A DNA stretch of 45,663 bases from Octopus bimaculoides (GCF_001194135.2 NC_068982.1:186814915-186860577), one strand, 5' to 3'. Shown: positions 14,068 to 41,927, numbered from the stretch's first letter. Made by a program: numbers and translations. The notes: generated from the sequence alone by a model not told the origin.

Positions 14068-14187
14068 NNNNNNNNNNNNNNNNNNNNNNNNNNNNNNNNN
14101 NNNNNNNNNNNNNNNNNNNNNNNNNNNNNNNNNNNNNNNNNNNNNNNNNNNNNNNNNNNNNNNNNNNNNNNNNNNNNNNNNNNNNNN

Positions 14188-18213: not shown

Positions 18214-20099
18214 CATATATGCATATATGTATACGTATATATATATATTATATATGCATGTATGTATACGTATATATATATATGTATACGTACATATATA
18301 TTTATACATATACGCATGTATGTATTCTAATGACTGGTCCCAAACCAGTGACTTTCATATCATTGATGCTCCATTAAAACGTAGACGACCGAAAGCAACA
18401 ACGGTAACATAATCAGCAGCAGCAGACGAGAACTACCACCACCACCGCCGCCGTCTACTATTCAAATTGGTGTTATTGACACCGTTGAAACGAATTAAAA
18501 CGCATTTGAACAATTATTTAAAGATATTTGATTAGTTTATTGTTTGAAGTTTAAAAAAAATTTCATAAAACTATGACTCTCCATGTACGATTAGAATTTC
18601 TGTTTTGGGCCTGGAAAATACATATTTTTGACAAAGAAAATCTTTCATTGTAGTTGACGACAAGAAAAGAAAAGGCGCCAAAAATGATGATAATAATCAG
18701 GGGAGGTAATGGGAGAAGCAAGAAACACAGGAGAGGTAAGCAACTTAGCAACAGGCATAAATAAGTTTCAGTAAAGTTGTTAATGTTTATATCATTTGTT
18801 GGCAAACATATTTAACTGAATGTGGACGTAATTTATATTGAAATGACAAATATACGCCACTTTGACGCTATCAAAATATTCCTATATTCTGGACACAAAG
18901 TTTATAAGTAATTATCATTCTACCTTAATTGTAAGTATTGTTATATTGATGCTCGTTTTGAAATCTCCTTGGAAACATCGTCTCCAGTCATGAAATTATT
19001 CCCAACATTCAGNNNNNNNNNNNNNNNNNNNNNNNNNNNNNNNNNNNNNNNNNNNNNNNNNNNNNNNNNNNNNNNNNNNNNNNNNNNNNNNNNNNNNNNN
19101 NNNNNNNNNNNNNNNNNNNNNNNNNNNNNNNNNNNNNNNNNNNNNNNNNNNNNNNNNNNNNNNNNNNNNNNNNNNNNNNNNNNNNNNNNNNNNNNNNNNN
19201 NNNNNNNNNNNNNNNNNNNNNNNNNNNNNNNNNNNNNNNNNNNNNNNNNNNNNNNNNNNNNNNNNNNNNNNNNNNNNNNNNNNNNNNNNNNNNNNNNNNN
19301 NNNNNNNNNNNNNNNNNNNNNNNNNNNNNNNNNNNNNNNNNNNNNNNNNNNNNNNNNNNNNNNNNNNNNNNNNNNNNNNNNNNNNNNNNNNNNNNNNNNN
19401 NNNNNNNNNNNNNNNNNNNNNNNNNNNNNNNNNNNNNNNNNNNNNNNNNNNNNNNNNNNNNNNNNNNNNNNNNNNNNNNNNNNNNNNNNNNNNNNNNNNN
19501 NNNNNNNNNNNNNNNNNNNNNNNNNNNNNNNNNNNNNNNNNNNNNNNNNNNNNNNNNNNNNNNNNNNNNNNNNNNNNNNNNNNNNNNNNNNNNNNNNNNN
19601 NNNNNNNNNNNNNNNNNNNNNNNNNNNNNNNNNNNNNNNNNNNNNNNNNNNNNNNNNNNNNNNNNNNNNNNNNNNNNNNNNNNNNNNNNNNNNNNNNNNN
19701 NNNNNNNNNNNNNNNNNNNNNNNNNNNNNNNNNNNNNNNNNNNNNNNNNNNNNNNNNNNNNNNNNNNNTTTCGAGAGTGGAGAGAAGAGATTCAGAAAAT
19801 TCACACGTCTCTTTATTTTCTCACAACTTTCTGAAATGTTTTTTTTTTTTTCATGAAATTTTCTTTAAATATATTTTAATTGGTGAAGATTACGGTTATA
19901 TTGGAATTCAATATGAAACGGAAAAAACTTGTTGGGCGCGTAAAAATACATACATACTGATACACACGTGTATCTACAAAATGAAACTGAAGTTTCGAAA
20001 AATTTGTGTGACTCAGTATGTATGTAGACGTGCCCAACGTACACATAGGTATTTTTCACATTAAATTCCGATATTATCGTAATCTACACCATCTGAGAG

Positions 20100-21769: not shown

Positions 21770-21839
21770 ATGTCTAGTCTTTCAGGTAGTTCTAGCATTG
21801 AAATACCATTGGACATTTCTCTTGAAAATCAAGTACAAG
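21770..21839 (+). CDS. CEP57-like exon 1 (short C-type, phase 0-1): MSSLSGSSSIEIPLDISLENQVQ
   Basis: ttctttgatacag|ATG acceptor and aag|gtaaacc donor match those of exons 4 and 7; its ATG may be the start or may continue an unseen upstream exon. Confidence 0.65.
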
Positions 21840-24800
21840 GTAAACCATTCCCCATTAACTTTTATCTGTTGTTTCAATCTTTAAACTGCAGCCATGCTTT
21901 GGAACCGCTTTGAAGAATTTTTAGTTGAATGAATTGATCGAATCTGTTTTTTTCTTAAGCTTGATACTTATTCTGTCAGTCTCTTTTACTGAACTGCTAA
22001 GTTACATGGATATAAACATACCAACATCATTAGAAAATAACTATTTGTAAATCTCACAATGTGAGATATTCAGCAACAGTACTTTGGAGTAAAGATTATT
22101 TGCCAACATAACATGGCAGTCCTGGTTTAGGACGAATGTTGCTGTAATTTAACCCCAAGAGGCATCGTCTCCAGCTGGCTATACGACATGATCTGTGTCC
22201 TTATGGTGGTGCTAGATTCCCTTGTTCGAAAATATAAGGACACTGATCGTGTCGTATAGCCAGCTGGAGATGATGTATCCTGGGGCTAAATTGCAGCAAC
22301 ATTCGTCCTAAACCAAGACTGCGGTGTTATGTTGGCAAATAATCTTTAATACCACCACCAGTTATCCAAGCTGCAATGGGGGACAAACACAGACACAGAG
22401 ACACACACACACATACATATTTGCATTCATAGCACCTCTAACCGTTAGCTATACAGAAGCTTTCAGCTTATCAAATTTCCTCGTAACTTTTACGTGCCAC
22501 CGGCACGAAAACCAGACAAGGCAGCGCTGACATCGGCCACATTTGGATGGTGCTTTTTATGTGCCACTGGCACGGGGATCACAACTACAATTTCCATTTG
22601 ATTTCATCATCATCATCTTTGTTTAAACATCCGCTTTCCATGCTAGCATGGGTTGGATAATTTGACTGAGGACTATCCTCAGCTGCCTAAATAAATAGAA
22701 TTTATTTAATCTATTATTTAATTCTATTTAATAATGCAGCTGAGGACAGCTCTGCATTTAAATTGATGTAATGATTGCATTGTTCAATTAAATGGAGTTG
22801 CTTGAAACGATCGTACTGCATCACCTCTGGATATCCTGTTGCTTATTTTGATTNNNNNNNNNNAAACGATCGTACTGCATCACCTCTGGATATCCTGTTG
22901 CTTATTTTGATTTTATTCACCTTATTTTGAAACTGTACGGATAATTCCACACTAATTTTTGGTGCCTCAGCTTAAGTACCTAATTCATTTGAATCTCAAT
23001 TATTTTGCTTATATATCATCCTTTCTGTTTTTCTCTCCTACCCTTTCCCTATTCTTCTCTCCCTTTCACCATTCCCTCTCTCTCTCTCTCACTCTTCCTC
23101 CTTGACTCTCTCGTCGCTGACACATGACGAGAGGGGATCTCTCTTTTTGCCCACTGCCTTCCTAAAGTAAAGACGTGTTTTTTTCTGTCTCTTCTCCATG
23201 TCTACCTAGCGTTCATAATAATTTTTCCATCGTCTTGGCTTAACAGCACTCACCGTTTGTCTTTACTGTCTTGTTCTCACTGTCCTGTTCTTGTTAACAC
23301 TTTAACCCTCCGCAAAATATCCCAAATTTTATTTAATTTGCTTGGCGGGAAGGACTGTTCCAACGAAGTTGCGTATTGTCCTTGCCTTTGAAACGCGGAG
23401 TAGATGGAACAGGGACAACTGACGAAGGGGTGTATTCTTTATGTTACATGTCTCGTTTCTCTGTTTTTTTTCATTGTTCAGAAAAAAGTTTGTTTTCTAT
23501 GTTTTCGTTTCTCATTGTGTTTAATGTTTTTTTGATGTCCTGTACCTATATATGCATGTATGTATACAAATAGATGTAGGTATGTACATATATGTATGGA
23601 TATATGCATATATTTATATATTATTATATGATCGAACGCCACACATCCTTTTCCAAGTAAGTTTTATCTATATCTAAATATATATATATATATATATATT
23701 TTTTTTTCTTTTTCCAGAATTTCGAGCTGCTCTAAGAAGCTTTGAGGAAGATTTAGAAAATGAAGAAATTGATCATAGCCAAGCTAAGAGTTACAGTAAA
23801 CACTGCATCTCTGAGACAGATGCTTACGAAAACTATTCACAAGACAATTCAAGAAATGAAACAACAACTAAAAGATTGACCGATCCTCAAGGTAATAACA
23901 TATTGATTGATAACTTTCATTTGTATCGTCATCATTTAACATCCATTGTCCATGCTGGCAAGTTGGAAGGCTGCAGTCTGATTTGGCATGGTTTCTGTGG
24001 CTGGATGCCCTTTCTAACCCTGACCACTCCAAGAACGTAATGAGTATTTTTATGTGCCACCTTCATGGGTGCCATTTGTGTGACGTCGGTATCTGCCACT
24101 ACTTCGATTTTACTTGGCTTGTAGGGTCTTCTTCTCAAGCATGACATAATGGCAAAGTTCTCGGTCATTCGTCATTGCCTCTGTGTGACCCAACACTCAG
24201 AAGATGTTTTTTTTAAGCAAAAGGTGTGTAAAACGAATCCCTGCTGTGCCACATAAAAAGCATCTGTGCTGGTGCCACGTATAAAGCACCCAGTACACTC
24301 TGTAAAGTGGTCGGCATTAGGAAGGGCATCCAGCTGTAGAAGCCATGCCAGAACAGATGACTGGAGTCTTGCACAGTTCTCCAGCTTGCTAGTTTCTGTC
24401 AAAGTGTCCAACCCATGCCAGCATGGAAAACATGTTAAATGATGATACTGTGTGTACCCTTGTCTTGACATTATGTTATAGTTATAGATAAACATTACTG
24501 TCATACAAGCGATGTTGTTACTTTTTGGTGTTCCATATAACACTATCTGGCTGTGGGGAAATGTTACACATTTCTTGTACACAAGAGAGGGTGGGTACTT
24601 GGCTGAAGATTCTACATGACCAATGTGAGCATGGAAAAGTGGATGTTAAATGATGAGGTTAATGTTGATTTTATATCCTTCCACTTGGAGAGTTTAAATG
24701 TAGTTACAACAATATGTCCTTCTGTTGAAATGAAATTTCTGTAAATTTCTATATCTTTGTGCTCTGCATTTTACATTTGATGTAATGTTCACATTGCTTA

Positions 24801-24945
24801 AATAAATGGAGTCGCATGAAACGATCATACTGCATTAACCTTGAATATCCTTGTTGCTTATTTTGATTTTAATCACCTTATTTTGGAATTGTATGGATAA
24901 TACTATACTTAATTCTGGTGCCTAAACTTAAGTATCATATTCACC

Positions 24946-24984
<39 letters not shown>

Positions 24985-27900
24985 TATATATATATATCAG
25001 TGGTAACTGTCACTCAGGCTGTTTGGGCTTAGCCTGAGTATAAATTTTGTAAAGTGAACGTGTTTTGCAAGCTGATATAATTTCTACCAACACTGACTTC
25101 AGTATATAATTACAGCCAATAACTCAGGCTCCTTTTATTAAGCCTGGTCACAGTTCATTTGTGTTCGTTCAGCGTCTGGCGATGGCTTAGAAGTGTCCTG
25201 TGTCAAAAAATATCATTCGTAGCAGACATTCTCTCAACATCGTTCACACACGCCTGACTCGAGCTCAGAAGTTACAGCCCGAGTTGTTGTCTATAACTGT
25301 AAAAATTAAAAGTAATTCAAATTCAATGTTTTCTTGAAGCAAATTTCTATAGAGATTAGGATTCAAATTCCAATCTATGAAAAGTTTCCTCCATTCTGCA
25401 ATAACCTTAAAGGAATGAAAATTTATCCAGCAGTTCAGGCTAATATGAATGAGCCTGGTAGGTGTAAAAGACTAACTGGCATCTCTTGTCAAGAGTACAG
25501 ACGACAATCAGATCGCTGATGTTTGTTGTGTACTCTGCTGTCGTTATTTGATTGCTGTTATTCGGTGCGTCTGTGTGTAAAGATCAATTGTGTTTTGCAA
25601 GGTTGCCTTATTTTTACTTTTAACTTAGAAATGGAGAAAGACATAGTGCTAGATATAAAAAATAAGCCATTTGGAGCTAGAAATAAAGTGGAAAAATGTG
25701 AAATTCTATGAACAGGCATGTGTCTTCTGCAAAATCTGTGATGAGCCTCAAGTGACGCTGATGACCTGGAGTCACCTCTGATATATATATATATATGCAC
25801 AAACACTAGCAGTTTTCTTCTAGTATTCTAATCAATATAAACGAAATCGATATATTGATTTCATTTCATATAATAAGCAATAGATACGAAGTTGCCATAG
25901 GCACAGAAAATAACAAGGCTTTCATTATTCAAAAAGCCGTGGTTTATACATTTGTGTATAACCAGATAAAATTTCAGATAACAAAAAATTCTCTGTAATT
26001 TTGATCTGATAAATAGATATAGGGTAAAAATTTTCATGAACTCCAAGCAATCCAGCAAAGTTACACGAAGAAGATTGTCTCAGTGCAACATGTCAGCTAC
26101 TGGGAGAGACTGAAAAAGTTAAGACTCTACTCCCTAGAACAAAGGCAGGATAGATACGCAGTGATATACATCTAGAAAATCCTAGAACTTGTACCAAAGT
26201 TTGGCATTGTCAGTTATGCAAACAGTAGAACGTGGCGCCACTGCATAGTACCAAAAATTCCAAGATTGCCGTCAGGATACATGACCAGATACTGCAACAG
26301 TTTGGGCTTCAAGGGCTTATAGCTCTTCCGTATCCTTCCACAAAGCCCGAGGGACCTACACAGGGTAGATGTAGGCATCTTTGCAACAAAACTGGATCTC
26401 CTTTTGTCAAGAGTTCCGGACGAACCTACCTTGCAGCAAGAAACACAGATGAGGGCAGCAACATCAAACTCCCCCCATTCACCAAATGCCACACATTGGG
26501 GGAGGTTTAATGAAAGTATAGCAAAGCAAACAGCGGTGCCACAGCTCTTGAGCTGAAACTAGAAAAGGAAAGAAAGGGGAAAAAATGAAACATCAGTTAA
26601 AAGATTGACCCATCCTCAAGGTAATAAGAGATATATTGATGATTGCCTTTCATTTATATACATGCATGCGTGTGTGTGTGTATACTATTGTCTTGATATC
26701 ATGTGTCTCAAAGTAAGACTTTGTAATTAATTTTTTATGGAAAAATTTGAATAAAAGTGTTTGAAGAAGATGGAGAATGTGACAAGAAACTGAAGCTGTG
26801 AGTGTGAGAGGAAAATTGTAAGTAGACAGGATAAAGGAAAAAAAGAGAATGGGAAGAGAGCGAAAAGGAAATAATACCTTAAAAATCATTATTACTCTGT
26901 AAGAGTTTTAAAAAGTGTTATCTTATGGTGATGATGGTGGTGGTGGTGGCGGCGACGATGGCGGACACGGGTTCTGTCTTACAAATTCCTCTCACAATGG
27001 TTGTGAGGCAAATGTCTTAACTACTCAGCCATGCACTTTAAGATAAATTGATCTGCTAACTGAAGGAGACACTTCTGGTAATGAATTGAAATGTTAAATC
27101 ATTTTTGCTCTAATCATTTTATCATCATCATCATCTAAACCAATGTCGATTAGGATGATGACAGCAAGAATGATTCAACATTTAAATTCATTACTTGAAC
27201 TGTCCCTTTGTCGTCTGTCGACAAAATGGATGCCTTTCTATTGGGGTTGGTATTTAGAAGAACATTGTTTACTCCCTACCTCACTAAATAAGGCAGTTTT
27301 TCTTGAAAATAATGAGTATTTGTGTCTCCTTACGCTCCCAAATAATTTGGTAAAAGACATTTCCTGAAGATGTCACACAATGGGATTGAACTTGAACTCC
27401 GTGATTGCAAAGTAAATTTGTCCAGCACACAACCAAACCTGTGTCCAGAAACATTGCTTTAATTCCATTTTTCCATGATTCCTATGAGTGAGGTGGATCT
27501 TGAATGTCTTGAATTGTTGAGAGCCAATATTTTTTTTTAAATGGAATCCTTTTATATTGCAGAACCTCAACAAAAGACATCATCAGTGATTGCTACTAAA
27601 CAGGTTGAAGTAAGTGTTTTATTAATTTAGTAATTTCTCTACTTAAACCATTTCCTGGAGTTCTCTTTTGAAGAAGGGAACAAACCCCTCTCAGTCAGTT
27701 ATCATCATCATCATCAAACATTCGTTGTCCATGTTGGCATGGATTGGACAGTTTGACGAAAGGGTTAAAATATATAATAGAGAAACAATTCTTAACCCTT
27801 TTGATACCAACCTGGCTGAAACCGGTTCTGGCTCTGAGTACAAATGTCTTGTTTTCATAAGTTCTGAATTAAAATCTTCCACCAAACCTTTGTCACAATT

Positions 27901-29363
27901 TATGTTCTTAACACTAGCTTAATGATAACTAAGTTATTTTACTAAATTCTTTGTTATATTCAAAGTAATTGAAAGAAACACAAAGCATCTCAACAGAAAC
28001 ATGGTAACAAAAGGGTTAAAGAACTTGCATTTATTGATATTCTTTGTTAAATGAATGATTTCAGCTATTTTAATCAGTTAATGGAGCCTCCATGCAATTG
28101 CTTGAAAATCTGCTTGAAACCATAGTTGAATCTCCCTCTAATCACACACTCATATCTTAACACGGCTCCCGAGCCTCATTTTACGTTTTATCTCAGGGTC
28201 CCAATACAATATCTTAATTAATTTTGACATGAGCAGTGTAATATTTTTACACTATACCATATGGGAGGCAAAGGTTACACAGGTAGTGTTAGATACATAT
28301 GTCCCACCAGAGGGTCATGTGGTACCCTAGTTCATATCACATCCTGGATACCACATGACCTACCTGTGACCAATTAAAAATTTTGGGTATTTTCTATTGG
28401 AAAATCTACCAAATAGTATTGGTACAAAAGACTGAGGGGGTGGGGGTGGAGACAGTAGTTCTGTGGTTCAGAAGTTGGGGCGTTTTGGTGAGTGATCCCT
28501 TACCTATAACTTATATGATATTCTGTGGATGTGTTCTAAGATGTCTGGATGTTTGTGGCTGCTGTACCTGATTTAGGAGCCATGCTTCATTTTGGGTCTC
28601 GTTTGAGAATTGCAGGTGTTCAGTAGTTGTTTGGAGTCTGAAGAATTTTCTGGACCAATCTTTGTGAAGCACTCTTTACTCTATTATTTCTATTTTCTTT
28701 GGTACAGATGGCTAATCTTTCTGACAGTTCTGATCTTCAACCTGATTCAGAGCAGATATTTGAAGACATAAGTACCGGTTCTTATAGGAAGCTGCCTCTT
28801 ACCAGTGATTCTCAACAACCTTCCGATAGACCAGCCTACAGTTTTCCTAAACCTAACACACAAGGTAAATTGTTCTTCATCATTCATCATCATTATCATC
28901 GTTTAACATCCGCCTTCCATGCTAGCATGGGTTGGGCGATTTGACTGAGGACTGGCGAACCGGATGGCTGCATCAGGCTCCAATCTGATCTGGCAGAGTT
29001 TCTACAGCTTGGTGCTTTTACGTGCCACCGGCACGAAGGCCACTCACACAGTACTGGCAACAGCCAACCTCAAAATGGTGTTTTTTACGTGCCACCTGCA
29101 TGGATGATTTTCTAACATGCTAGAAGGCAACACTGGTAAACAATTACGCTCAAATGGTGCTTATATATATATATATATCACTCTCTGAGTGGTTGGCGTT
29201 AGGAAGGGCATCCAGCTGTAGAAACTCTGCCAAATCAGACTGGAGCCTGGTGTTGCCATCCGGTTTCACCAGTCCTCAGTCAAATCGTCCAACCCATGCT
29301 AGCATGGAAAGCGGACGTTAAACGATGATGATGATGATGATGATGATATATATATAGATGATG

Positions 29364-29396
<33 letters not shown>

Positions 29397-31065
29397 CACA
29401 CTATCTCTGTTACAGTATGATATTTGAAATGTCTGTATGCCATTTTTAATCATCATAATTATATAGAAACCAGTGTTTCTCAACTAATTTTTACTTATCG
29501 ATCCCTTAGATTTCTGTTTTACTCTCCTTTTCAGCGCCGTTGGATGTTTAAAAAAAATCCTGTCACATCTTTATAATTAAATACTTTTAGGAATTGTATA
29601 AAATAAGTGTTAAAATATTTTGTGTCTTGTCGAAGTATCAGCAATTTATTGTAGATAAATTCTAATGGCAAAATTTTACATGAACCCTTGTTGAGAACGA
29701 CTGATTTAAAGGTATATTTTGTATTTCGTTGATATCTTTCCAGCTTTAATGACTGCTTTGAGAAGTTTTGAGAAGCAGATGAAGAATCTAGAATCTGAGC
29801 TTAATCTCGCTATGAGTCGCAATAAACAACTCCTCTCTGAAGCAGATGCTTACAAAAACTGTCCACAAAACAAGGCTGGGAAGGAAACATTTGAAGACTT
29901 GGCACCTCAGCAGAGTGGTAAGTAGCCTCTGTTGACAATTGACTCTTTCCATTTTCAGTATTTTAATGTTATATCCTTGTGCCTCCAATATTGTAGTATT
30001 GTTGATATTGTCGACAATAAATAAAGAATACACTGTAACAGTGTTATAACAATACAAAATAGAAACAATTGCAGTAACAAACATGCAAAGAAGAATCAAC
30101 AATCAATATTTCCAACACATTAACTTGAACTGTAAAAACTGCCCACTACATCAGACTGCTACTATTTATATGAATTGGTCCCATCTGTTCCATTGAAAGG
30201 GTGCTGTAGTCTTGCCACAACATCTAATAACATCAACATTCAAGCGAGGTCGTTGCCAGCGCCGCTGGACTGACTCCTGTACAGGTGGCACATAAAAACA
30301 CCATTTGAGCGTGGCTGTTGCCAGTACCGCCTGACTGGCCCTCGTGCTGGTGGCATGTAAATGCACCCAATACTCTCTCGGAATGGTTGGCGTTAGGAAG
30401 GGCATCCATCTGTAGAAACTCTGCCAGATCAGACTGGAGCCTGGTGCAGCCATCTGGTTTCACCAGTCCCCAGTCAAACAGTCAAACCGTCCAACCCATG
30501 CTAGCATGGAAAGCAGACGTTAAATGATGATGATGACGAAAATGAGACGCCAGTTTTTCTTATGATTGCTACATTACAGACATAGACAAAAGCCCTAAAA
30601 ACTACTTCTTTTGGATCTTTAAAAATTTCTCTTATATCATGATTGACAAATAATAACTTTAATCTCATCTATGCTGTTCAACCTAAACAGTTTTCCTAAC
30701 GATGTGACTCGAGTGCCTCAACAGCTCATGCCCCTCACACCTGACCTCACCTGAATCTCCACTTTTATATTACAGAACCTGAAGAAAAAAGATCATCAGT
30801 GACTACCACTAAACAGAAGGTCGATCAAGTAAGTATTCTATTGATTTAACATTGATTTGTGCTACAAGAATTGAATCTGTTTTAGAACCCATGTAATTAT
30901 CTATATTTTGGAAACCAGTGGCTGTTTGGTAAGAAGTTTGCTTCTCAGCCACATGGTTCTGGGTTCAGTCCTACTGCATAGCACCTTGAGCAAGTGTCTT
31001 CTATAGCCTCAGGCCAACCAAAACCTTGTGAGTGGATTCGGTAGACAGAAACTGTAAGAAACCTG

Positions 31066-31108
<43 letters not shown>

Positions 31109-33866
31109 ACGTGTGTCTTTGTGTCTGTGGTTGTCCCCCACCACCATTTGACAACCAATGTTGGTGTGTTTGTGTCCTCCAGCATGGGCTCAATCTAATG
31201 ACATCCTACTGCGACAGTCACGGAAGTCTGGTGCAGGCTTCTGCCTGGCCAGCTCTTGTCAAACTATCCTACCCATGCCAGCATGGAAGGCAGACGTTAA
31301 ACGATGATGATGATGATGATGATGATGGTGGTGGTGATAAAGTAAAAGATAAAAGTACCTTCTTTTACATGTTTCAGTCATTGGACTGTGGCCATGCTGT
31401 GGCACCACTTCAAAGGGTTTAGTTGAATAACTCAACTCCTGTACTTCTTTTTCCTTTTTAAGTTTGGTATTTATTTTGTTTGTCCCTTTTGCTGAACCTC
31501 TACATTAAGGTAACATCAGCAACTAACACTGGTTGTGATGCAGTGAGGGAAGAGAGTGGGCAGATATGTAACCCCCCCACATACATATATGTGCAACAGA
31601 CTTCCACACAATTTCTGTCTACCAAATCCACTCACAAGGCATTGGTTGGCTTGGGGCAAGCATAGAAGACTCTTGCCCAAGGTGCTGCACAGTGGGACTG
31701 AACTTAGAATCATGGGGTTGCATCTATCTAGCTATATATATGTATATATATATATATATATATATACATTTTACTGTGGCACCAACATGAGTGAGGTTGC
31801 CTTGTACCTTGCAGGACAGAAGAATGTCCTCACAGCTTTGTGTTGCTTCCCTTCATTCAGTGAAATTTGACCAAGTGAGTAGGAAAGGAAGACCAATTGT
31901 TCCAGTGCAGTTTTGGTTGTGTTACATGAGTCTCTGTTTTCTTTGGTACAGGTATTTAGTCCTCCCAGCTGTAGTGACGTTAGACCACATTCAGATCAGA
32001 TTTTTGACATTAGCACTGGTTCTTACAAGAAACTTCCCACTACAAAGCCTTCAATCAATGGTGATCATCAGACTTCTGATAAACCAGTCTACACGTTTTC
32101 TGAAACAAACATAGAAGGTAAACCATTCTCTATCTTTGTATTACTTTAACCCATTCATGCCGATCGTCCGTTCAAACTGACCCTTAATTTATAAGGGTAT
32201 AAAACAAATACTTCATACAAATTGTGATTTGTGTATGATCTGTATCAAAAAATGAAACATGTTCTTAACACGTATGCAATCTGAATCAAACGGATTTCAA
32301 TGAAATTCTTTTCAGTTGTTATTTAGGTCAAAATAATAGTTTCTGTGAATTTTCAGGCAATTTCATTCCCTAGAAAAATTTCGGCATGAATGGGTTAATA
32401 TAAGCCTACATATTTATTTTGACAGGCGTCTGTATGTTTTATTCTCATTTCTTCTGGTAACACTTTGGGATAAACTTATCTAATATACATACGATATTGA
32501 AACAGACTAAATATATATCTACATCTATATATTGGTTTCAAATTTTGGCACACGGCCAGCAGTTTTGGGTGTGGGGGTAAGTCAATTACATCAACCTCAG
32601 TGCTCTATTGGTAACTTAGTATGTATGCACACACATATGTATTAATATATTCATAGGCAGATATATATATCATCATCTATATTTTGTTGGTTTCTTTGCA
32701 GCTTTAATGAATAGTCTAAAAAGATATAAGCAGCACGTTGATGTTTTGGAATCTGAACACGGCCAAGCTGTAAGTCATAGCACAGAGTGCGTCTCTACTG
32801 AGACGGAGGATTACAGAAATCATTCACAAAAGAGTGCAAGGAATGGAACAACAGTTGAAAGATTGACTCATCCTCAAGGTAAGATACTAGCATGTTGATA
32901 CATGCATCTGTTCATCATCAGCTGTGTTTTTCAAAAGTTCAATTCCCAATCCATGTGGTTTTAGGTTCAGTCCCACTGTGTGGCACCCTGGGCGAGTGTC
33001 TTCTACTAAGCCTTGGGCTGATCAAATCCTTGAGTATATTTGGAGGATGAAAACTGAAAGAAGCTGGTTATGTGCAAAGCGACGAGTTGGCAGAAACGTT
33101 AGCACGCCAGGCAAAATGCTTTGCGGTATTTCATCTGCCGTTACGTTCTGAGTTCAAATTCCGCTGAGGTCGACTTTGCCTTTCATCCTTTCAGGGTCGA
33201 TTAAATAAGTACCAGTTACTTACTGGGGTTGATCAAATCGACTTAATTCGTTTGTTTGTCCCCTCTGTATGTGGCCCCTTGTGGGCAGTAATGAAATAAG
33301 GTTATGTGCGATTGTGCATGTGTGCATATATGTATTGTTGTAAAGCAGTCTTCTGTCACTTTGTGTATCTATCTTTTGATGACAGTTGTCGCTCTGACAG
33401 ATATTGTTATCGTCCAAAGTTGTCGATAGAATGGTTCTATCTAGCACTGTATGACCCCCAGTCGTTCAGTGTTATCATCCTCAAAAAAATTGGTTTGTTA
33501 TAACGCCCACTCAGTATCACAGGATAATTACTATATCAACGCAGACACAACTATCAACATATACTCTCAACCTTCCTGACCTTCCCCTGTCGACCAGCTA
33601 CTGGTCTCTTTATAATGACTGGATCCTACCACTTTTTTACCAGGCAGGGTGTACAGCTTCACTATACAGCATGTATGTCTGTGTTTGTTGTCATTTCCTA
33701 TCAATGAATCTTCTGCCAGCTTTGCTGCTTCAAAAACTTGTAACGTATGAGATCCCTTGCTTGAAAAACAGGGAACAGTTAGCAACTGGAAGGACATTTG
33801 GCTATAAAACAAACCTCATATTTTTGTCTATGAAAAAACGTGCATAAAAAATTTGAATGAAATATG

Positions 33867-33897: not shown

Positions 33898-36551
33898 CTC
33901 CAAATTATTCTATTCATCCAGATATAATTGCATCAGTAGCCAGAATTAAATCAAGGTGTATTTTGCTGAAGAAAAACTTAGAACAGCTGAAGCAATTGGC
34001 TTTGAAGGCAGAGCAAAACAAGGTAAACCTACAGAAAGAGTTGGAAAATCAAAAGAGCTGTAAAACTTTAGCACTTCATCAATCATCTCCACATCAATTA
34101 TCTCTGGACCAAATTACAGGACTTGAACGAGAAATATTACAACTGTCTATTATTCAAAATGTAGCTGAAGTAAGTATTCCATTAATTTAGTAACTTCATT
34201 TACTAGAGCTCTCTTTCGAAGAAGGTAACAAACTCCTCTCGATTGTCAACCGCCATCATCATCATAATCATCGTCGTTTTACGTCTGCTTTCCATGCTGG
34301 CATGGGTTGGATGGTTTGACTGAGGGCAGGCAAGCCACAAGACTGCACCAGGTTCCAACCTAATCTGGTAAGGTTTCTACAGCTGGATGCCCTTCCTAAC
34401 GCCAACTACAGGTGCTTTTTATGTGCCATCAGCATAGGAGCCAGTCTGGTGGGATTAGCAATGACCATGCTCAAATGGTGCCTTTTACATGCCACTGGCA
34501 CGGGGGTCAGTCAGCAGGTATTGGCATCGACCATGTTTGGTCGATGATTTTTATGTGCCACCAGCATGGGAGCCAGTCATGCGGGCCTGGCATCAACCAC
34601 GTTCAGATGGTGCTTTTTACATGTCACCAGCACTACACTCTCTGAGTGGTTGGCGTTAGGAAGGGCATCCAGCTGTAGAAACTCTGCCAAATTAGATTGG
34701 AGCCTGGTGTAGCCATCCGGTTGCACCAGTCCTCAGTCAAATCGTCCAACCCATGCTAGCATGGAAAGCGGACGTTAAACGATGATGATGATTTACGTAG
34801 AATACGCATTGTTTGATTCAAACAACCATTTCTTATTTTCTGTATGTTGGGCCTCACAGAGGCAATGACTGAGACCTTTTGGCATTATGTCGTGCTTGAG
34901 AAGAAGACCCATCAAGCCGAGCAAAATCGCAGTCATGGCAGATACCGGTGTCACAAATGGCACCCATGCCAGTGGCACGTAAAAGCTCCTGTTACACTCT
35001 TGGAGTGGTTGGCCTTATGAAGGGCATCCAGTCATAGAAAACCATGCCAAAATAGACTGGAGTCTGGTACAGCTTGCCAGCCCAAGGATGACAGATGTTA
35101 GATGATTATGATGACAACGATGACAATGATGATCAGCACTCTGAATTTTATGTTGTTTTATGGAGTTTAAAATTTTTCTCTTTCTCTAGCAACGGATTAA
35201 GCTTTTGGAACAAGCCCTAACAATAGAGAAGAAACAAATGGAGAGATTAGAGACGGCCTTAAAAGTAAGTGAGTAAACTTTATTTCAAAGTCTGTGTTTA
35301 TGTGGGGACTGTTATGGTAGTTGAAGATAATGTGGCCGTTTCAACATGGTCACAAATTTAGATAAGTTTGTTTGATGTAACCAGGAGAGGGATCTGATAT
35401 TTTAGGGATACCTTTTCAATCTAAGACTATTGTACTCTCTCAGACTAAAGGGACATTTTGGAGACAGTCCTCAAAATGCCGGTTTTTTCATTCTCCCACA
35501 AAATACAAACTTATTCAAATAATATTGGTAGTGGTGGCGCCAGCAGTGGTGGTGGTTGTTAAATTTTTCTGAGTTCATTCGTTTGTTAATTTCTTTTAAT
35601 TTTTTAATTTTCAAATTTTAATCTTTCTAATTAAATTTTTTCAGTACTATCCATAATTATAGGCACATGTATGGCTGTTTGGTAAGAAGCTTGCTTCTCA
35701 AACACATGGTTTCGGGTTCAGTCCTACTGTGTGGCACCTTGGGCAAATGTCTTCTAAAATAGCCTTAGGCCCACTAAAGCCTTGTGTGTAGATTTGATAG
35801 ATGGAAACTGAAGGAAGCCCATCGTGTATATATATATTGAGAGAGGGGTGTGTGTATGTGTTCATGCTTTTATAGCCAATTGGAACCTGAGCAACTCCTT
35901 CAGCTGGCCAGTTCCTGTCAAACTGTCCAACCATGCCAGCATGGAAAGCAGATTTTAAATGGTGATGTGTGTGTGTGTGTATTTGTGTGTTCCCCACCCC
36001 ACTGCTTGAAAACTGGTGTTGGTTTGTTTAGTTCCCTTGTGATTTAGTGGTTCAGCAAAAGAGAACCAATAGAACAAGTGCCAGGGTTTGCGAAAAAGAA
36101 ACAAAATAAGTCCTGGTGGGGTGGGGGTCGATCTGTTTGACCAACAATTCTCCAAGGTGATGCCCCAGCATGGCCGCAGTCTAATGACTGAAACAAATAA
36201 AAAAAATTGAAGGATAACTCCCTTGTCTTTCTATTTCCAGTCATTCACCCATCAAAATGGTGCCGACATTAACATGCAGGACGTTTTCACTTTAACGGAA
36301 CCACACAGCAAATGTCATCATCTCGACTCTTCGGCAAACAAAAGACAAATTGCTGGTACCACGTCGACAGACTGTACAAGTTCTTCTTTGCTGAACTGTA
36401 ATAACCTCCAAGAACTGTTTGCTCAACTCCAAAGAGAATTCTGTCAGCTGACATGGTAGGAAGCGCCATTGTTTGTGTTTGATGGTGTGTTAAGAAGTTT
36501 GCTCACCAACTGCACGGTCCTGGGTTCTGTGCACGCTTGTTGCTTGTGCCC

Positions 36552-36607
<56 letters not shown>

Positions 36608-39600: not shown

Positions 39601-41927
39601 CCATGCTAGATGTGCCACCTGCACAGGAGCCAGTCCAGCGGTACTGGCAACGAACCCGCTCAAATGTTCTTTCATGTGCCAAGAAGGCGACGTTGGTAAC
39701 GATCACACTCAAATGGTGCTATTTACGTGCCACCGGCGTGGAAGCCAGACAGCTGCTCTGGCGACAATCACGCTCGGACGGTGCTCTTGACGCTCCACTG
39801 GTACAGGTGCCATCATGATTTCGCTTTCGCTTGCCCCGACAGGTCTTCGCAAGCCGAGTTTAGTGTTCAATGAAGAGACGTTGGCATGGGTGCCAGGCTA
39901 CAAATTTAGTTCGATTTAGGAATTAATTCATAAAGGTTATGAATGCTTTTTACGGGAATTTGTGCCGTTCTTTTAGTAAAACCTGCTTTACTTCTTTCAG
40001 TGACACTGGCAGAAGGAAGTGGCTCCCTACTTATTGCTCCCAAATCCACCATAAATGTTTGCTTATATTGAGTTCTGGTGATTGAAAGGATCTGTTCATG
40101 TGGCCTGCTTTGCTCTTGTATTCTTTGTACCAATTTTGAATAACATTAGTCTTGTGAATTGACGCATTATCATCCTGAATGTAAATTTTGTAAACCATGG
40201 TGAAGGCAACTCCAAATAAAGTCTGAGTGTAGAGAGGATGGTTGAGTTCTGTGAGACAATCTCTTTAGTGGTGGTGGCATGGAAGAATGCACTCCGTCCA
40301 CCCTGTAATTTAAGTGGTGATAGCAAGGCTGTCCACTCCGAAAACCAATGCCACATGTAGAATTTTAATTTGATGAAGATGGTAATGATGATGACGTAAA
40401 TCCACATTCACTGAAGTAGTAGTAGTAGTAGTAATAGTAGTAGTGGTAATAGTAGTAGTAGTAATAGTAGTAGTGGTAATAGTAGTAATTAATATTCTTT
40501 ATTTCTTTTACTTGTTTCAGTCATTTTTGACTAAATTTGAATCTTAAAAATATTTGATTGACAGGAAACACCAGAATTTAACGAAACTGTATAACGAGAC
40601 ACATGAGAGCCAGTTACACGAAGACCTTGAGACAGAGATTGACAATCTCGTGGATCTGATGGAAACAAAAGCAAAGCAAATGGTTAAAATTCGCAAAGCC
40701 CTCTACCCGGTAAAGGAATCTATCAATAATTGCTTCTATTTTCGTTTTTTTTTTCACCTCCATCCCACAACACACAAACACACCCACATGCTCACACATT
40801 TCCACCACCCCCAGCATCCCTGCTGCTTAGGTATCTTTTCCTTTTTACCTTTTAGTCCTTTCATTTTATTTATTTATCTTTTTCTACTTTTATGTGAACA
40901 TTGTCGCCTGACTGGCTCCTGTGTCGGTGGCACATAAAAAGCACCATTCATGCGTGCTCAATGCCAGTACCGCCTGCCTGGCCCTCATGCTGGTGGCACG
41001 TAAAAAGCACCCACTACATCTTGGAATGGTTGGTGTTAGGAAGGGCACCCAGCTGTAGAAACTGCCAGATCAGATTGGAGCCTGGTGCAGCCGCTGGCTT
41101 TCCAGACCTCAGTCAAACCGTCCAACTCATGCCAACATAGAAAGCGGGCGTTAAATGACGATGATGATGATGATTGCCGCCTGACGGGCTCCCATGCCAG
41201 TGGCACATAAAAAGCATCATTCAAGCGTGATCGATGCTGGTGCCACCTGACTGGTTCCCTTGCCGTGGCATGTAGAAATCACCCACTACACTCTTGGAGG
41301 AGTGGTTGGCGTTAGGAAGGTCATCCAGTTGTAGAAACCTTGCCGAATCAGATTGGAGCCTGGTGCAGCCTCCTGGCTTGCCAGTCCTCAGTCAAACCAT
41401 CCAACCCATGCCAGCATGGAAAGCAGACATTAAATGACGATGATGATAATGTGGATGACATATATAATAAATTAAAATTGTACACAAATACAATTGATAT
41501 TTTCTATTCTCTTTACTTTTAACAGTGACAAAGCAGGGAAGAGGGGAAGTCTCTTATGTGTTAAGGATTTCACTCCGGGAGTCTTTGAAAGATCTTGTTT
41601 TATTTCCCTGCTTTATACACACACACACACACACAATGTAAAAATAATGTATTTCCATTTTTTCTCGATTCCATTTCGTATTTCTTCATTTCTCTTCAGC
41701 CAAAGAAAGAAACTAAACATGAAAAGAGGAAAAAACGAGAAACCAATCAATCATTGTGTAAAACCAAAACTGTTTCCTTAGGGAACCATTCAAGAACTTT
41801 GAAAAGGCCTTGCAGGAATTTACCACAGACAGGCTCAGAAAATGTTGGGAGAAAACCTCATCAAATTTCAAAAGATCCAAGAAAATTACAAGCTACGTTG
41901 CGTCAAGAGGATTTACGTTGGGTGTGA
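21770..41927 (+). CDS. CEP57: CEP57/translokin-like centrosomal protein, 13 coding exons, 642 aa, with a triplicated N-terminal exon block
   Basis: All 13 exons have GT-AG boundaries and compatible phases, total 1929 nt with no internal stop. CLD-like segments: PAYSFPKPNTQ-ALMTALRSFEKQMKNLESE; SRCILLKKNLEQLK; LDQITGLEREILQL...AEQRIKLLEQAL. MT-binding-domain-like segment: LQELFAQLQREFCQLTWKHQNLTKL...LETEIDNLVDLMETKAKQMVKIRK. C-terminus KLQATLRQEDLRWV*. Compared against the recalled human CEP57 sequence; orthology versus paralogy is unresolved. Confidence 0.85.
22090..22348. mobile_element. Fold-back MITE-like element: ~114-bp imperfect inverted arms, 29-bp spacer, TA termini
   Basis: 22091-22204 (aaagattatttgccaacataac...gtgtccttat) pairs with 22234-22347 (ataaggacac...gttatgttggcaaataatcttt). 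Confidence 0.75.
22805..22912. repeat. 49-bp duplication across a 10-N gap (assembly overlap), within a dispersed repeat also found at ~24800-24950
   Basis: aaacgatcgtactgcatcacctctggatatcctgttgcttattttgatt occurs on both sides of the gap. Confidence 0.8.
23200..23570 (+). mobile_element. Possible Penelope-like terminal-repeat fragment
   Basis: cctttgaaacgcggagtag...actgacgaagggg resembles the GAAACG/CTGA(C/T)GA hammerhead-like signature of Penelope pseudo-LTRs; no ORF. Confidence 0.35.
23718..23891 (+). CDS. CEP57-like exon 2 (A-type, 174 nt, phase 1-1): EFRAALRSFEEDLENEE...KRLTDPQ
   Basis: Polypyrimidine tract ttttccag| and |gtaata donor; open frame; homologous to exons 5 and 8. Confidence 0.8.
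24998..25780. mobile_element. Degenerate non-autonomous TIR element inserted in a (TA)n tract
   Basis: Starts cagtggtaact and ends agtcacctctg (reverse complement cagaggtgact, 9/11 match); (TA)n on both sides. Confidence 0.45.
26035..26575 (+). mobile_element. CR1-group LINE 3' end (ORF2 C-terminus plus tail)
   Basis: ELQAIQQSYTKKI..VSYWERLKKLRLYSLEQRQDRYAVIYI*KIL..VP...KLDLLLSRVPDEP...RAATSNS; tail ggtgccacagctcttgagctgaaactagaaaag; two in-frame stops. Confidence 0.8.
26583..26620 (+). pseudogene. Decapitated remnant of a fourth A-type exon (3' end plus donor)
   Basis: aaatgaaacatcagttaaaagattgacccatcctcaag|gtaataa matches the ends of exons 2 and 8 and the start of intron 2; no acceptor upstream (LINE tail). 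Confidence 0.75.
27563..27609 (+). CDS. CEP57-like exon 3 (B-type, 47 nt, phase 1-0): EPQQKTSSVIATKQVE
   Basis: tttatattgcag| and |gtaagt; homologous to exon 6. Confidence 0.75.
27792..28019. mobile_element. piggyBac-type MITE (TTAA TSD, CCC...GGG ends)
   Basis: ttaa|cccttttgatacca ... tggtaacaaaaggg|ttaa; TIR 13/14. Confidence 0.75.
28708..28864 (+). CDS. CEP57-like exon 4 (C-type, 157 nt, phase 0-1): MANLSDSS...PAYSFPKPNTQ
   Basis: tttctttggtacag| and |gtaaat; homologous to exon 7. Confidence 0.8.
29744..29917 (+). CDS. CEP57-like exon 5 (A-type, 174 nt, phase 1-1): ALMTALRSFEKQMKNLESE...APQQS
   Basis: tctttccag| and |gtaagt; best match to the start of the CEP57 centrosome-localisation coiled coil ([20 protein letters not shown]). 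Confidence 0.85.
30776..30828 (+). CDS. CEP57-like exon 6 (B-type, 53 nt, phase 1-0): EPEEKRSSVTTTKQKVDQ
   Basis: ttttatattacag| and |gtaagt; homologous to exon 3. Confidence 0.75.
31952..32117 (+). CDS. CEP57-like exon 7 (C-type, 166 nt, phase 0-1): VFSPPSCS...DISTGSYKKLP...PVYTFSETNIE
   Basis: ttttctttggtacag| and |gtaaac; shares QIF(E)DISTGSY(R/K)KLP with exon 4. Confidence 0.8.
32146..32398. mobile_element. piggyBac-type MITE (TTAA TSD)
   Basis: ttaa|cccattcatgccga ... tcggcatgaatggg|ttaa; perfect 14-bp TIR. Confidence 0.85.
32702..32878 (+). CDS. CEP57-like exon 8 (A-type, 177 nt, phase 1-1): ALMNSLKRYKQHVDVLESE...RLTHPQ
   Basis: tttctttgcag| and |gtaaga; homologous to exons 2 and 5. 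Confidence 0.8.
33080..33302 (+). mobile_element. Near full-length tRNA-derived SINE (second family); another copy at 38620-38822
   Basis: gttggcagaaacgttagcacgcc...ttctgagttcaaattccgctgaggtcgactttgcctttcatcctttcagggtcga...cccttgtgggcagtaatgaaataag. Confidence 0.8.
33922..34169 (+). CDS. CEP57-like exon 9 (248 nt, phase 1-0), coiled coil DIIASVARIKSRCILLKKNLEQLK...QNVAE
   Basis: ctattcatccag| and |gtaagt; resembles CEP57 ENKCNLLEKQLEYMR...LEKLDLLEQEYNKL. Confidence 0.85.
35190..35264 (+). CDS. CEP57-like exon 10 (75 nt, phase 0-0): QRIKLLEQALTIEKKQMERLETALK
   Basis: ttttctctttctctag| and |gtaagt; heptad coiled coil. Confidence 0.85.
36241..36455 (+). CDS. CEP57-like exon 11 (215 nt, phase 0-2): SFTHQ...LQELFAQLQREFCQLT
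   Basis: tctttctatttccag| and tg|gtagga; its end resembles the start of the CEP57 microtubule-binding domain. Confidence 0.8.
36554..37720 (-). mobile_element. 5'-truncated RTE LINE: ORF2 C-terminus, 3'UTR and (GAT)n tail
   Basis: Minus: FVCGRCTG..VVDSFCYLGDQV..FDACVRTAMLHGRETWAV..RRLERNEASML..GRLRKT..TEAMTGDRGLW, running contiguously into the repeat body and the (cat)n at 36554-36605. Confidence 0.85.
37930..38430 (-). mobile_element. RTE LINE ORF2 fragments
   Basis: RTDWRKFRELQSLL..KGRLGDVCVRTAVLHGSETWAL..KRLERNEASML. Confidence 0.75.
38980..39460 (-). mobile_element. RTE LINE reverse-transcriptase fragment
   Basis: MQFGFVLGSGTTDSIFLVRQLQKYLAKNKLLYWAFAGLKKAFD and QGSLLSPLLFI...PWELLYDDL. 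Confidence 0.8.
40413..40487. repeat. (TAG/TAA)n microsatellite
   Basis: gtagtagtagtagtaatagtag... Confidence 0.9.
40565..40709 (+). CDS. CEP57-like exon 12 (145 nt, phase 2-0): WKHQNLTKL...METKAKQMVKIRKALYP
   Basis: ttgacag| and |gtaaag; completes a Trp codon with exon 11; strong match to CEP57 ELEALVGRMEAKANQITKVRK. Confidence 0.85.
41700..41927 (+). CDS. CEP57-like exon 13 (terminal): PKKETKHE...KLQATLRQEDLRWV*
   Basis: ttcatttctcttcag| acceptor, phase 0; C-terminal motif resembles CEP57 KDMQSIQNSLQSSSLCW. Confidence 0.8.
   Translation, partial: PKKETKHEKRKKRETNQSLCKTKTVSLGNHSRTLKRPCRNLPQTGSENVGRKPHQISKDPRKLQATLRQEDLRWV

What the first reader, a model, noticed from the sequence alone, without database searches (positions are those of the whole stretch)
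21770..32878. CEP57-like gene with its N-terminal exon block tandemly triplicated in frame
Seen: exons fall into three homology classes in the order C-A-B-C-A-B-C-A, ahead of a single-copy coiled coil and microtubule-binding tail. A-type exons are 174/174/177 nt, phase 1-1 (ALRSFE/ALRSFE/SLKRYK...E.DAY/E.EDY). C-type exons share ttcttt(g)(g/a)tacag acceptors, aag|gtaaa donors and DISTGSY(R/K)KLP. B-type exons are 47/53 nt. All splice in frame. Established: in CEP57 the P..AYPESNSR-AIFSALKNLQ segment begins the centrosome-localisation domain. Inference: the protein carries three diverged copies of the CLD-initiating helix separated by Ser/Thr-rich linkers, an architecture I do not know from other CEP57s. 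It could give multivalent centriole/CEP63-type binding, a longer spacer, or isoform choice, since each block is phase 0-0 and can be skipped.
Basis: partly seen in the sequence, partly recalled or inferred. Interest (0 to 1): 0.78.

Follow-up and report, generated by a model that had tools for sequence, protein, structure and literature searches.

The report
Octopus CEP57 gene with triplicated start
The octopus version of the centrosome protein CEP57 has its first three exons copied in tandem and in frame, three times in Octopus and twice in Argonauta. The repeat is real and specific to this lineage, the gene model is already in public annotation, and only one copy of each conserved motif still looks ancestral.

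Summary
The window is Octopus bimaculoides chromosome CM046602.1.

- **Repeat structure:** exons run C-A-B-C-A-B-C-A with the stated lengths, phases and splice sites.
- **Conservation:** the same 13 exons, with the same lengths, GT-AG sites and no stops, occur in gap-free O. sinensis and O. vulgaris assemblies.
- **Assembly gap:** it lies inside the C1-A1 intron, and the 49 nt on each side are identical. It does not affect the reading frame.
- **Distribution:** Argonauta has two blocks. Cuttlefish, bivalves, gastropods and vertebrates have one. The repeat therefore arose in the octopod lineage in at least two steps.
- **Origin of B exons:** they are relics of the first coiled-coil exon (E9), so the repeated unit was C-A-E9.
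- **The copies are not equivalent:** only A2 keeps the ancestral signature of the start of the centrosome-localisation domain (the PINC region) and strong constraint (dN/dS about 0.1-0.2). Only C3 keeps the upstream "KPFIN...KPV" motif. A3 evolves at dN/dS about 1.2-1.6, and constraint on block 1 is not shown.

There is no RNA evidence for block skipping. Interest is modest.

The parts
18709..18735 (+). Upstream first coding exon of isoform X1 (MGEARNTGE), spliced to C1
   Evidence: tblastn of the X1 N-terminus; the gene range in L006 maps to window 18709-41927
21770..21839 (+). C1: C-type exon, 70 nt, phase 0 to 1, starts with ATG. An internal deletion of about 87-96 nt removed the DISTGSY...KP motif
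   Evidence: conserved with the same length in O. sinensis and O. vulgaris
22854..22863 (.). Assembly gap inside the C1-A1 intron, flanked by identical 49-nt copies (22805-22853 and 22864-22912)
23718..23891 (+). A1: A-type exon, 174 nt, phase 1 to 1; predicted helix; weak match to the ancestral PINC-region profile
   Evidence: dN/dS 0.63
26584..26621 (+). A': remnant of an A1 3' end with an intact donor. It lies downstream of a local duplicated segment (22749-22994 resembles 24761-24951) and is not in any annotated model
   Evidence: also present in O. vulgaris at L003 17658-17696
27563..27609 (+). B1: 47-nt exon, phase 1 to 0. Its 3' end and donor region are homologous to those of E9
28708..28864 (+). 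C2: C-type exon, 157 nt, starts with a conserved ATG (M98); keeps only the second half of the N-motif
29744..29917 (+). A2: A-type exon, 174 nt. It is the copy that best keeps the ancestral CLD-start / PINC-region helix and is under strong purifying selection
   Evidence: Pfam Cep57_CLD profile 1-58; custom profile 12.5-14.3 bits; dN/dS 0.08-0.21; helix 148-185
30776..30828 (+). B2: 53-nt exon, phase 1 to 0; same length as the single B exon of Argonauta
31952..32117 (+). C3: C-type exon, 166 nt, no ATG. It is the copy that best keeps the conserved SY..(Y)P..KP.IN...KPV..F.E.N motif
   Evidence: custom profile 21-25 bits; dN/dS 0.07
32702..32878 (+). A3: A-type exon, 177 nt, directly before the rest of the CLD; predicted helical but fast-evolving
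   Evidence: dN/dS 1.2-1.6 and 69% aa identity to O. sinensis; no Pfam hit alone; helix 276-327
33922..34169 (+). E9: single-copy coiled-coil exon, 248 nt (Cep57_CLD profile 61-143); source of the B exons
35190..35264 (+). E10: coiled-coil exon, 75 nt, end of the CLD
36241..36455 (+). E11: linker and start of the Cep57_MT_bd domain
40565..40709 (+). E12: Cep57_MT_bd domain exon
41700..41927 (+). E13: basic C-terminal tail ending ...KLQATLRQEDLRWV, plus the stop codon

Best explanation
This is the Octopus bimaculoides orthologue of CEP57, annotated as LOC106874820 / cep57l1.

**History.** In the octopod lineage, after the split from cuttlefish, the 5' three-exon unit was duplicated in tandem inside the gene. 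The unit was exon C (N-terminal motif), exon A (start of the centrosome-localisation domain, i.e. the PINC-region helix) and exon E9 (first coiled-coil exon). The upstream E9 copy shrank by about 195 nt, in frame, to a 53-nt B exon. That two-block state is shared with Argonauta. Octopus carries a further block (C1-A1-B1). That block either arose later or was lost in Argonauta.

**Product.** All copies stayed in frame and are most likely spliced in series. The result is a 642-aa protein with three helices joined by Ser/Thr-rich disordered linkers, placed ahead of an ordinary CEP57 coiled coil and microtubule-binding domain.

**Drift of the copies.** The copies degenerated in a complementary way. 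The ancestral helix signature survives in A2 and the ancestral upstream motif survives in C3. A3, C2 and block 1 have drifted.

**Inferred mechanism (not shown).** The protein still acts as a centriole-to-pericentriolar-material linker. The C-terminal domain sits on centriolar microtubules and the E9-E10 coiled coil dimerises. A2 would be the main partner-docking helix (pericentrin PACT and/or Cep63-type binding). It now sits about 130 residues upstream on a flexible tether that carries the C3 motif. A1 and A3 would act mainly as spacers or auxiliary helices.
For: **Shown**
- The model reproduces and equals the RefSeq protein.
- Both CEP57 Pfam domains score above threshold.
- All 13 exons have identical lengths, GT-AG sites and no stops in three Octopus species, although intron lengths differ up to about two-fold.
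- Every length difference among paralogous and orthologous C, A and B/E9 exons is a multiple of 3: C 70/157/166/181/160, A 174/174/177/180/174, B/E9 47/53/53/248.
- There are no indels in 1,018 nt of repeated exons, where about 5 are expected at the rate seen in alignable intron (P=0.006).
- Purifying selection is shown for block 2 (p=8e-4), block 3 (p=0.03) and the rest of the gene (p=2e-7).
- Argonauta has two blocks with a 53-nt B exon.
- Cuttlefish CEP57 and about 137 other family members have one block.
- Trees put Argonauta A-I with A2 and A-II with A3.
- The B donor regions match the E9 donor region.
- Complementary retention is seen in three ways. Custom profiles built from non-octopod CEP57s favour A2 and C3. 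On isolated blocks, Pfam hits only Octopus block 2 and Argonauta block I. dN/dS differs between A2 and A3 (Fisher p=0.002), and between A2+C3 and the other repeated exons (p=2e-4).
- AlphaFold2 predicts three helices with disordered linkers.

**From the literature**
- The human region aa 68-103 (PINC) is needed for centriole localisation and pericentrin PACT binding (PMC6389942).
- It is modelled as a parallel dimeric helix (PMC11321043).
- N-terminal Cep57 binds Cep63 (PMC11194501).
Against: - No RNA reads could be examined, so serial splicing rests on gene predictions. The O. vulgaris annotation did use Iso-Seq and PASA (PMC10700109), but it also used O. bimaculoides proteins as evidence.
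- Constraint on block 1 is not shown from substitutions (omega 0.5-0.6, p=0.28).
- A1 falls outside both the A2 and A3 clades with low support, so the order and date of the second duplication are open.
- Profile scores for single short exons are small (2-25 bits).
- With the combined C+A profile, blocks 2 and 3 score about equally (about 35-37 bits), so A3 is not devoid of signal.
- From my own recollection of human numbering, the conserved PINC lysine (K79) would be position 12 of the A exon. It is Q, H and D in A2, A3 and A1, so pericentrin binding may not be conserved at all.
- The AlphaFold2 model is a monomer built on a shallow alignment (mean pLDDT 59).
Confidence: 0.7

Rival explanations
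1. The blocks are alternative modules rather than serial ones. Transcripts would use different starts or skip blocks, as tandemly duplicated cassette or mutually exclusive exons do, so most proteins would carry one or two helices rather than three.
For: Blocks 1 and 2 are exact phase 0-0 cassettes of 291 and 384 nt. C1 and C2 both begin with ATG directly after the acceptor, and the C2 ATG is conserved in three species while C3 has lost it. An older O. bimaculoides model, XP_014778171.1 (545 aa), starts at M98 in C2.
Against: All other annotated isoforms in three species carry all three blocks, apart from one 5'-truncated O. vulgaris model that starts inside A1. They differ only at the extreme 5' end or after E10. 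Mutually exclusive use would not require the B-to-C junction phases to stay compatible, yet they are kept in all species.
Confidence: 0.15
2. The upstream blocks, at least block 1, are decaying relics that gene predictors stitch into the model because they happen to stay open. The functional protein would be the two-block or one-block form.
For: Block 1 has omega 0.5-0.6, not distinguishable from neutral. C1 has lost its motif. Block 1 gives no Pfam or profile hit. A dead A' relic lies in the same block. No transcript-derived protein fragments for this gene were found in the protein collection.
Against: Exon lengths, splice sites and frame of block 1 are identical in three species. Its indels relative to its paralogues (87 or 96 nt in C1, 6 nt in B1) are all in frame. 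C1 is 96% identical at protein level between species. Block 2 is clearly constrained.
Confidence: 0.12
3. The repeat is an assembly artefact, with collapsed or duplicated contigs joined at the gap.
For: There is an N gap with duplicated flanks inside the region. The chromosome-level record is the same sequence as the window, so it gives no independent check.
Against: The copies are only about 66-78% identical in DNA, which is far too diverged for an assembly duplicate. The same arrangement is present in two independent gap-free assemblies of other species, and two blocks are present in Argonauta.
Confidence: 0.01

Closest known systems
CEP57 / CEP57L1 family (Pfam Cep57_CLD PF14073 + Cep57_MT_bd PF06657), e.g. 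cuttlefish CEP57 CAE1313664.1 and human CEP57
   Same: Both Pfam domains are present in the same order. The motif SY..YP..KPFIN...KPV..FPESN followed by the helix A(V/L)(I/L)SAL..L is recognisable in C3 and A2. The C-terminal ...KLQ(A/T)TLR(Q/K)(E/D)DL.W ending is shared.
   Different: The N-terminal unit is present three times (twice in Argonauta) instead of once. The best helix copy (A2) now lies upstream of the best N-motif copy (C3). The central polybasic stretch and the HYRLNL..IPFVAGK motif found in cuttlefish, bivalves and vertebrates have no counterpart in the octopod loci. The protein is only 34% identical to the decapodiform proteins P0015 and P0133.
PINC motif of human CEP57 (aa 68-103), the pericentrin PACT-docking helix (PMC6389942, PMC11321043)
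   Same: The A exons begin at the position where the Pfam CLD profile and the vertebrate AIFSALKNLQ.KIR.LELER helix begin. All three are predicted helices.
   Different: Only A2 scores against profiles of that helix. No binding was tested. Going by my recollection of human numbering, none of the three copies keeps the conserved lysine.
Intragenic tandem exon duplication followed by complementary degeneration (the 'permutation by duplication' route known for protein domains)
   Same: Homologous exons of conserved length class and phase lie in tandem, and different ancestral motifs are retained in different copies. The order of the two best-kept motifs is therefore reversed relative to the ancestor.
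   Different: These are short linear motifs and helices in a coiled-coil protein, not a globular domain. Function of the retained copies is inferred, not shown.
Horn shark (Heterodontus francisci) CEP57L1 isoform X1, XP_067883291.1
   Same: It is the only other family member among 151 scanned that shows two PINC-like helices, at residues 61-93 and 157-214.
   Different: It is an independent case in a vertebrate paralogue and a predicted isoform only. No C-type or B-type repeat was examined there.

Membership tests
CEP57 family | Cep57_CLD (PF14073) above the Pfam gathering score | tested here: met
   53.9 bits against a cut-off of 28; residues 281-459 match profile 1-175
CEP57 family | Cep57_MT_bd (PF06657) above the Pfam gathering score, C-terminal to the CLD | tested here: met
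   38.9 bits against a cut-off of 31.3; residues 496-563
CEP57 family | Central polybasic (LMN) stretch and HYRLNL..IPFVAGK motif seen in most members | tested here: not met
   No counterpart in the protein alignment or by tblastn of cuttlefish, squid-like, oyster and Lingula proteins against the Octopus and Argonauta loci. Only a weak remnant is present in E11. This is a conserved feature, not a Pfam-defining one.
CEP57 family | Single orthologue of invertebrate CEP57 rather than an extra paralogue | tested here: inconclusive
   No second octopod CEP57-like cluster appeared in the exhaustive representative search or in the search with the decapodiform protein P0015. Whole genomes could not be searched.
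PINC-motif pericentrin anchors | Helix matching the conserved 36-aa PINC sequence | tested here: inconclusive
   A2 scores 12.5-14.3 bits with a 43-position profile from 18 non-octopod CEP57s; A3 scores 2.5 or less and A1 below 0. Pfam CLD profile 1-58 hits block 2 only, below threshold.
PINC-motif pericentrin anchors | Binds the pericentrin PACT domain and is needed for centriole localisation | not testable with these tools
   Requires co-immunoprecipitation or localisation assays, or multimer modelling.
Tandem cassette or mutually exclusive exon arrays | Adjacent homologous exons of the same phase and length class | tested here: met
Tandem cassette or mutually exclusive exon arrays | Alternative rather than serial inclusion in mRNA | not testable with these tools
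   No read data were available. Annotated isoforms include the blocks in series, except one 545-aa model that starts in C2.

The most novel reading that the evidence does not exclude
Octopods rebuilt the partner-binding end of CEP57 by duplication followed by complementary loss. The docking helix (A2) and the upstream linear motif (C3) swapped order. The docking helix now sits on a flexible Ser/Thr-rich tether of about 130 residues. The gene also lost the central polybasic and HYRLNL motif that drives self-assembly and microtubule nucleation in human Cep57. Together these changes would mean a differently organised centriole-to-pericentriolar-material linker in this lineage, with A1 and A3 adding valency or reach.
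Probability: 0.2. Interest if true: 0.55.

Novelty: new variant of a known kind. Interest (0 to 1): 0.35.

Why it matters
CEP57 tethers pericentrin and the Cep63-Cep152 complex to the mother centriole through a short N-terminal helix. Here a whole animal lineage carries that helix in two or three diverged copies, with clear differences in constraint between the copies. This is a natural experiment on how much of the N-terminal region is needed, where it must sit relative to the coiled coil, and whether valency matters. It is also a clean, datable example of in-frame exon-block duplication followed by complementary motif loss within a single protein. The practical weight is limited. The gene model is already public, the function is inferred, and octopus centrosome biology is not an experimental system at present.

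Tried and rejected
- **Independent closure of the gap:** the chromosome-level record turned out to be the window itself, with the same Ns.
- **Transcript-derived protein fragments spanning block junctions:** two searches of the 5.8-billion-protein collection returned only gene-model proteins.
- **Species behind the closest single-block transcript contigs:** searching for their SRA run numbers in papers found nothing. The P0133 cluster was later tied to Acanthosepion pharaonis through cluster membership. P0015 remains unnamed.
- **A hidden third block in Argonauta:** none was found in the gene or in 10 kb upstream at E<0.01.
- **Homology of the B-exon 5' end to the E9 5' end:** an eye-level resemblance (CATCAGT...) is not supported by blastn. 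Only the 3' end and donor region are supported, and part of the shared downstream intron is a dispersed repeat.
- **Placing A1 by neighbour-joining:** unresolved.
- **Other genes on either strand inside the region:** only transposon-like open frames were seen.
- **Fold search of the model:** not run, because a mostly coiled-coil and disordered model with pTM 0.26 would give meaningless matches.


Full report
**What the window is.** The window is Octopus bimaculoides chromosome record CM046602.1 of assembly GCA_001194135.2. A locus fetched from that record matches window 12709 onward with no mismatches and carries the same N runs. The gene is LOC106874820, named "centrosomal protein cep57l1" by RefSeq. 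It runs on the + strand from 18709 to 41927.

**Check of the observation.** I rebuilt the exon model from the sequence. They join into an open frame of 1,929 nt, giving 642 aa. That protein is identical to XP_014778169.1 / UniProt A0A0L8GTG0.

- Exon lengths are 70/174/47, 157/174/53 and 166/177, and the phases are as stated.
- tblastn between copies gives A1-A3 7e-12, A1-A2 5e-8, A2-A3 2e-3 and C2-C3 3e-11.
- B1 and B2 are 78% identical over 87 nt including their flanks.
- C1 aligns with C2 and C3 over the acceptor plus about the first 35 nt, and over about the last 35 nt plus the donor. An internal deletion of about 87-96 nt removed the DISTGSY...KP motif.

**The assembly gap.** The ten Ns at 22854-22863 lie in the C1-A1 intron, about a kilobase from either exon.

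- The 49 nt before and after the gap are identical.
- A paralogous stretch at 24761-24951 aligns across the gap position with a single copy of that 49-mer.
- The gap therefore looks like two contig ends that overlap but were not merged.
- In gap-free O. sinensis and O. vulgaris assemblies, C1 and A1 are adjacent in the same order, 1.5 kb apart.
- About 1 kb around the gap has no alignable counterpart in those species, so its length is unverified. It is intronic, and the frame does not depend on it.

**It is a CEP57.** The full model hits Cep57_CLD (53.9 bits, residues 281-459, profile 1-175) and Cep57_MT_bd (38.9 bits, residues 496-563). Both are above Pfam's cut-offs.

**Conservation.** I fetched the orthologous loci of O. 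sinensis (L002), O. vulgaris (L003) and Argonauta hians (L001).

- In both other Octopus species all 13 exons are present in the same order, with exactly the same lengths, intact GT-AG sites and no internal stop. Intron lengths differ up to about two-fold.
- In the alignable parts of the introns, O. bimaculoides and O. sinensis differ by 7.4% and by 5 gap openings per kb. The 1,018 nt of repeated exons have no indel, where about 5 would be expected (P=0.006).
- Every length difference among paralogous and orthologous copies is a multiple of three: C 70/157/166 and Argonauta 181/160; A 174/174/177 and 180/174; B 47/53/53 against E9 248.
- The substitution pattern shows purifying selection on block 2 (p=8e-4), block 3 (p=0.03) and the single-copy part (p=2e-7). 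It does not show it on block 1 (omega 0.5-0.6, p=0.28).

**Age and origin.**

- Argonauta has two blocks, C-A-B(53 nt)-C-A-E9. No third block was found in the gene or in 10 kb upstream.
- An exhaustive profile search of 1.84 billion representative proteins found 99 family members. Most are 470-530 aa with one N-terminal unit.
- The nearest non-octopod proteins are P0133 and P0015. P0133 clusters at 90% identity with CEP57 of the cuttlefish Acanthosepion pharaonis (501 aa). P0015 is 75% identical to P0133. Both have a single block.
- A profile of the C+A region, built from 18 non-octopod proteins, finds one copy in 137 of 151 family proteins and two copies in 14. Thirteen of the 14 are octopod proteins of this gene. 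The other is horn shark CEP57L1 isoform X1.
- In neighbour-joining trees Argonauta A-I groups with A2 and A-II with A3, both well supported. A1 falls outside both with low support.
- The first duplication therefore predates the Octopus-Argonauta split and postdates the split from decapodiforms. Whether block 1 is an Octopus addition or an Argonauta loss is open.

**What the B exons are.** The last bases of B1 and B2, their donors and the first 20-30 nt of the following introns match the 3' end, donor and intron start of E9. B1 is 87.5% identical over 32 nt (E=3e-5) and B2 is 80% over 35 nt (E=6e-4). Further downstream similarity is partly a dispersed repeat and was discounted. No significant match was found for the B 5' ends. 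The simplest reading is that the repeated unit was C-A-E9 and that the upstream E9 copy lost about 195 nt in frame. This happened before Octopus and Argonauta diverged, since both have a 53-nt B exon.

**The copies are not equivalent.** Four lines of evidence agree.

| Evidence | Better-kept copies | Drifted copies |
|---|---|---|
| Custom profile, upstream motif SY..YP..KPFIN..KPV..FPESN | C3: 21-25 bits | C2: about -1.5 to 6 bits (second half only); C1: none |
| Custom profile, helix | A2: 12.5-14.3 bits; Argonauta A-I: 14.0 bits | A3: at most 2.5 bits; A1: below zero; Argonauta A-II: none |
| Pfam Cep57_CLD on isolated blocks | Octopus block 2: 16.4 bits; Argonauta block I: 20.4 bits | Octopus blocks 1 and 3 and Argonauta block II: no hit |
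| dN/dS, O. bimaculoides vs O. sinensis / O. vulgaris | A2: 0.08-0.21; C3: 0.07 | A3: 1.6 / 1.2; A1: 0.63; C2: 0.47 / 0.14; B exons: 0.5-1.5 on very few sites |

- A2 differs from A3 (Fisher p=0.002), and A2+C3 differ from the remaining repeated exons (p=2e-4).
- The deeper Octopus-Argonauta comparison shows the same pattern: A2/A-I 56% and C3/C-II 58% identity, against A3/A-II 40% and C2/C-I 41%.
- One caveat applies. With the combined C+A profile, blocks 2 and 3 score alike (about 35-37 bits), so A3 keeps some signal in context.

**Structure.** AlphaFold2 was run on a 29-sequence alignment (mean pLDDT 59, pTM 0.26). It predicts helices at 16-50, 148-185 and 276-327, each starting in or just before one A exon. 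Residues 51-147 and 189-273 have pLDDT below 50. The CLD helices (338-386, 397-451) and the microtubule-binding helices (494-565) follow. The limits are those of a monomer model on a shallow alignment.

**Isoforms.** Fourteen annotated proteins from three Octopus species were compared.

- They differ in the 5' exon (MGEARNTGE, or a longer O. sinensis start) and after E10.
- Some skip E11 and read E12 out of frame. The O. vulgaris forms join E10 to E13 and so lack the microtubule-binding domain.
- None skips a block internally.
- One older O. bimaculoides model (545 aa) begins at the C2 ATG. One O. vulgaris model (476 aa) begins inside A1.
- The O. vulgaris annotation used Iso-Seq, RNA-seq and PASA, but also O. 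bimaculoides proteins (PMC10700109), so it is only partly independent.
- No transcript-derived fragments of this protein were found.

**How it most likely works.** What is shown is an in-frame, conserved, lineage-specific repeat in a bona fide CEP57 gene, with unequal constraint on the copies. The rest is inference from the literature.

- In human CEP57, residues 68-103 are required for centriole localisation and pericentrin PACT binding (PMC6389942).
- That region is modelled as a parallel dimeric helix (PMC11321043).
- N-terminal Cep57 binds Cep63 (PMC11194501).

On that basis A2 is the best candidate for the working docking helix. It now sits about 130 residues upstream of the coiled coil, on a linker that contains the conserved C3 motif. 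A1 and A3 are more likely spacers or auxiliary helices than full extra binding sites. Whether pericentrin binding is kept at all is uncertain.

**Comparison and novelty.** The gene meets the Pfam definition of the family. It departs from it in the repeated N-terminal unit, in the reversed order of the two best-kept motifs, and in lacking the central polybasic and HYRLNL..IPFVAGK segment. No paper in the library links Cep57 with octopus. The sequence and model are public. The repeat architecture and its history appear undescribed. I rate it a new variant of a known kind, of modest interest.

Noticed in passing
window 26584-26621, with 22749-22994 and 24761-24951: Block 1 contains a local partial duplication. 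A second copy of the A1 3' end with an intact donor (A') lies about 2.7 kb downstream of A1. The intron segment that spans the assembly gap is repeated upstream of A'. A' is also present in O. vulgaris (L003 17658-17696) and is not in any annotated model.
   Followed up: partly
window about 25990-26580: Sequence immediately upstream of A' looks like the 3' part of a LINE-type retrotransposon. This was judged by eye only, and it may have replaced the 5' part of A'.
   Followed up: no
window 35265-36240 and 36456-40564 (introns around E11); L001, L002: The octopod CEP57 loci have no counterpart of the central polybasic stretch or the HYRLNL..IPFVAGK motif that is conserved in cuttlefish, bivalve, brachiopod and vertebrate CEP57. 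Only a weak remnant is present at the start of E11.
   Followed up: partly
window E10-E13 (35190-41927); proteins P0005-P0009, P0012, P0013: Annotated isoforms end soon after E10 (E11 skipped, or alternative ends). In O. vulgaris they join E10 directly to E13 in frame. These forms would lack the microtubule-binding domain.
   Followed up: no
L002 8865-9011; L002 17674-17781; L003 6815-6922: There are two further A-exon-like sequences upstream of the gene in O. sinensis and O. vulgaris. One has an acceptor and is 75% identical in DNA to the A1 5' region. The other coincides with the end of the annotated upstream gene in O. vulgaris. No counterpart was found in the window, which has several N runs upstream.
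   Followed up: partly
protein P0037 (Heterodontus francisci CEP57L1 isoform X1), residues 61-93 and 157-214: A shark CEP57L1 prediction carries two PINC-like helices. This is an apparently independent duplication of the same element.
   Followed up: partly
window 1211-1522, 7312-7440, 8151-8160, 14068-14187, 17936-18171, 19013-19768: There are six further assembly gaps in the window. The last one (756 N) lies inside the first intron of this gene, between the MGEARNTGE exon and C1.
   Followed up: no
window 34411-34632 and many introns (e.g. 22603-22674, 28883-28953, 29179-29335, 34636-34792): Many copies of a SINE-like element (...catcatcatc...ccatgctagcatgggttgg...) fill the introns. A 66-nt unit is repeated 3.4 times in the E9-E10 intron. 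Two copies (29179-29335 and 34636-34792) are 97% identical.
   Followed up: no
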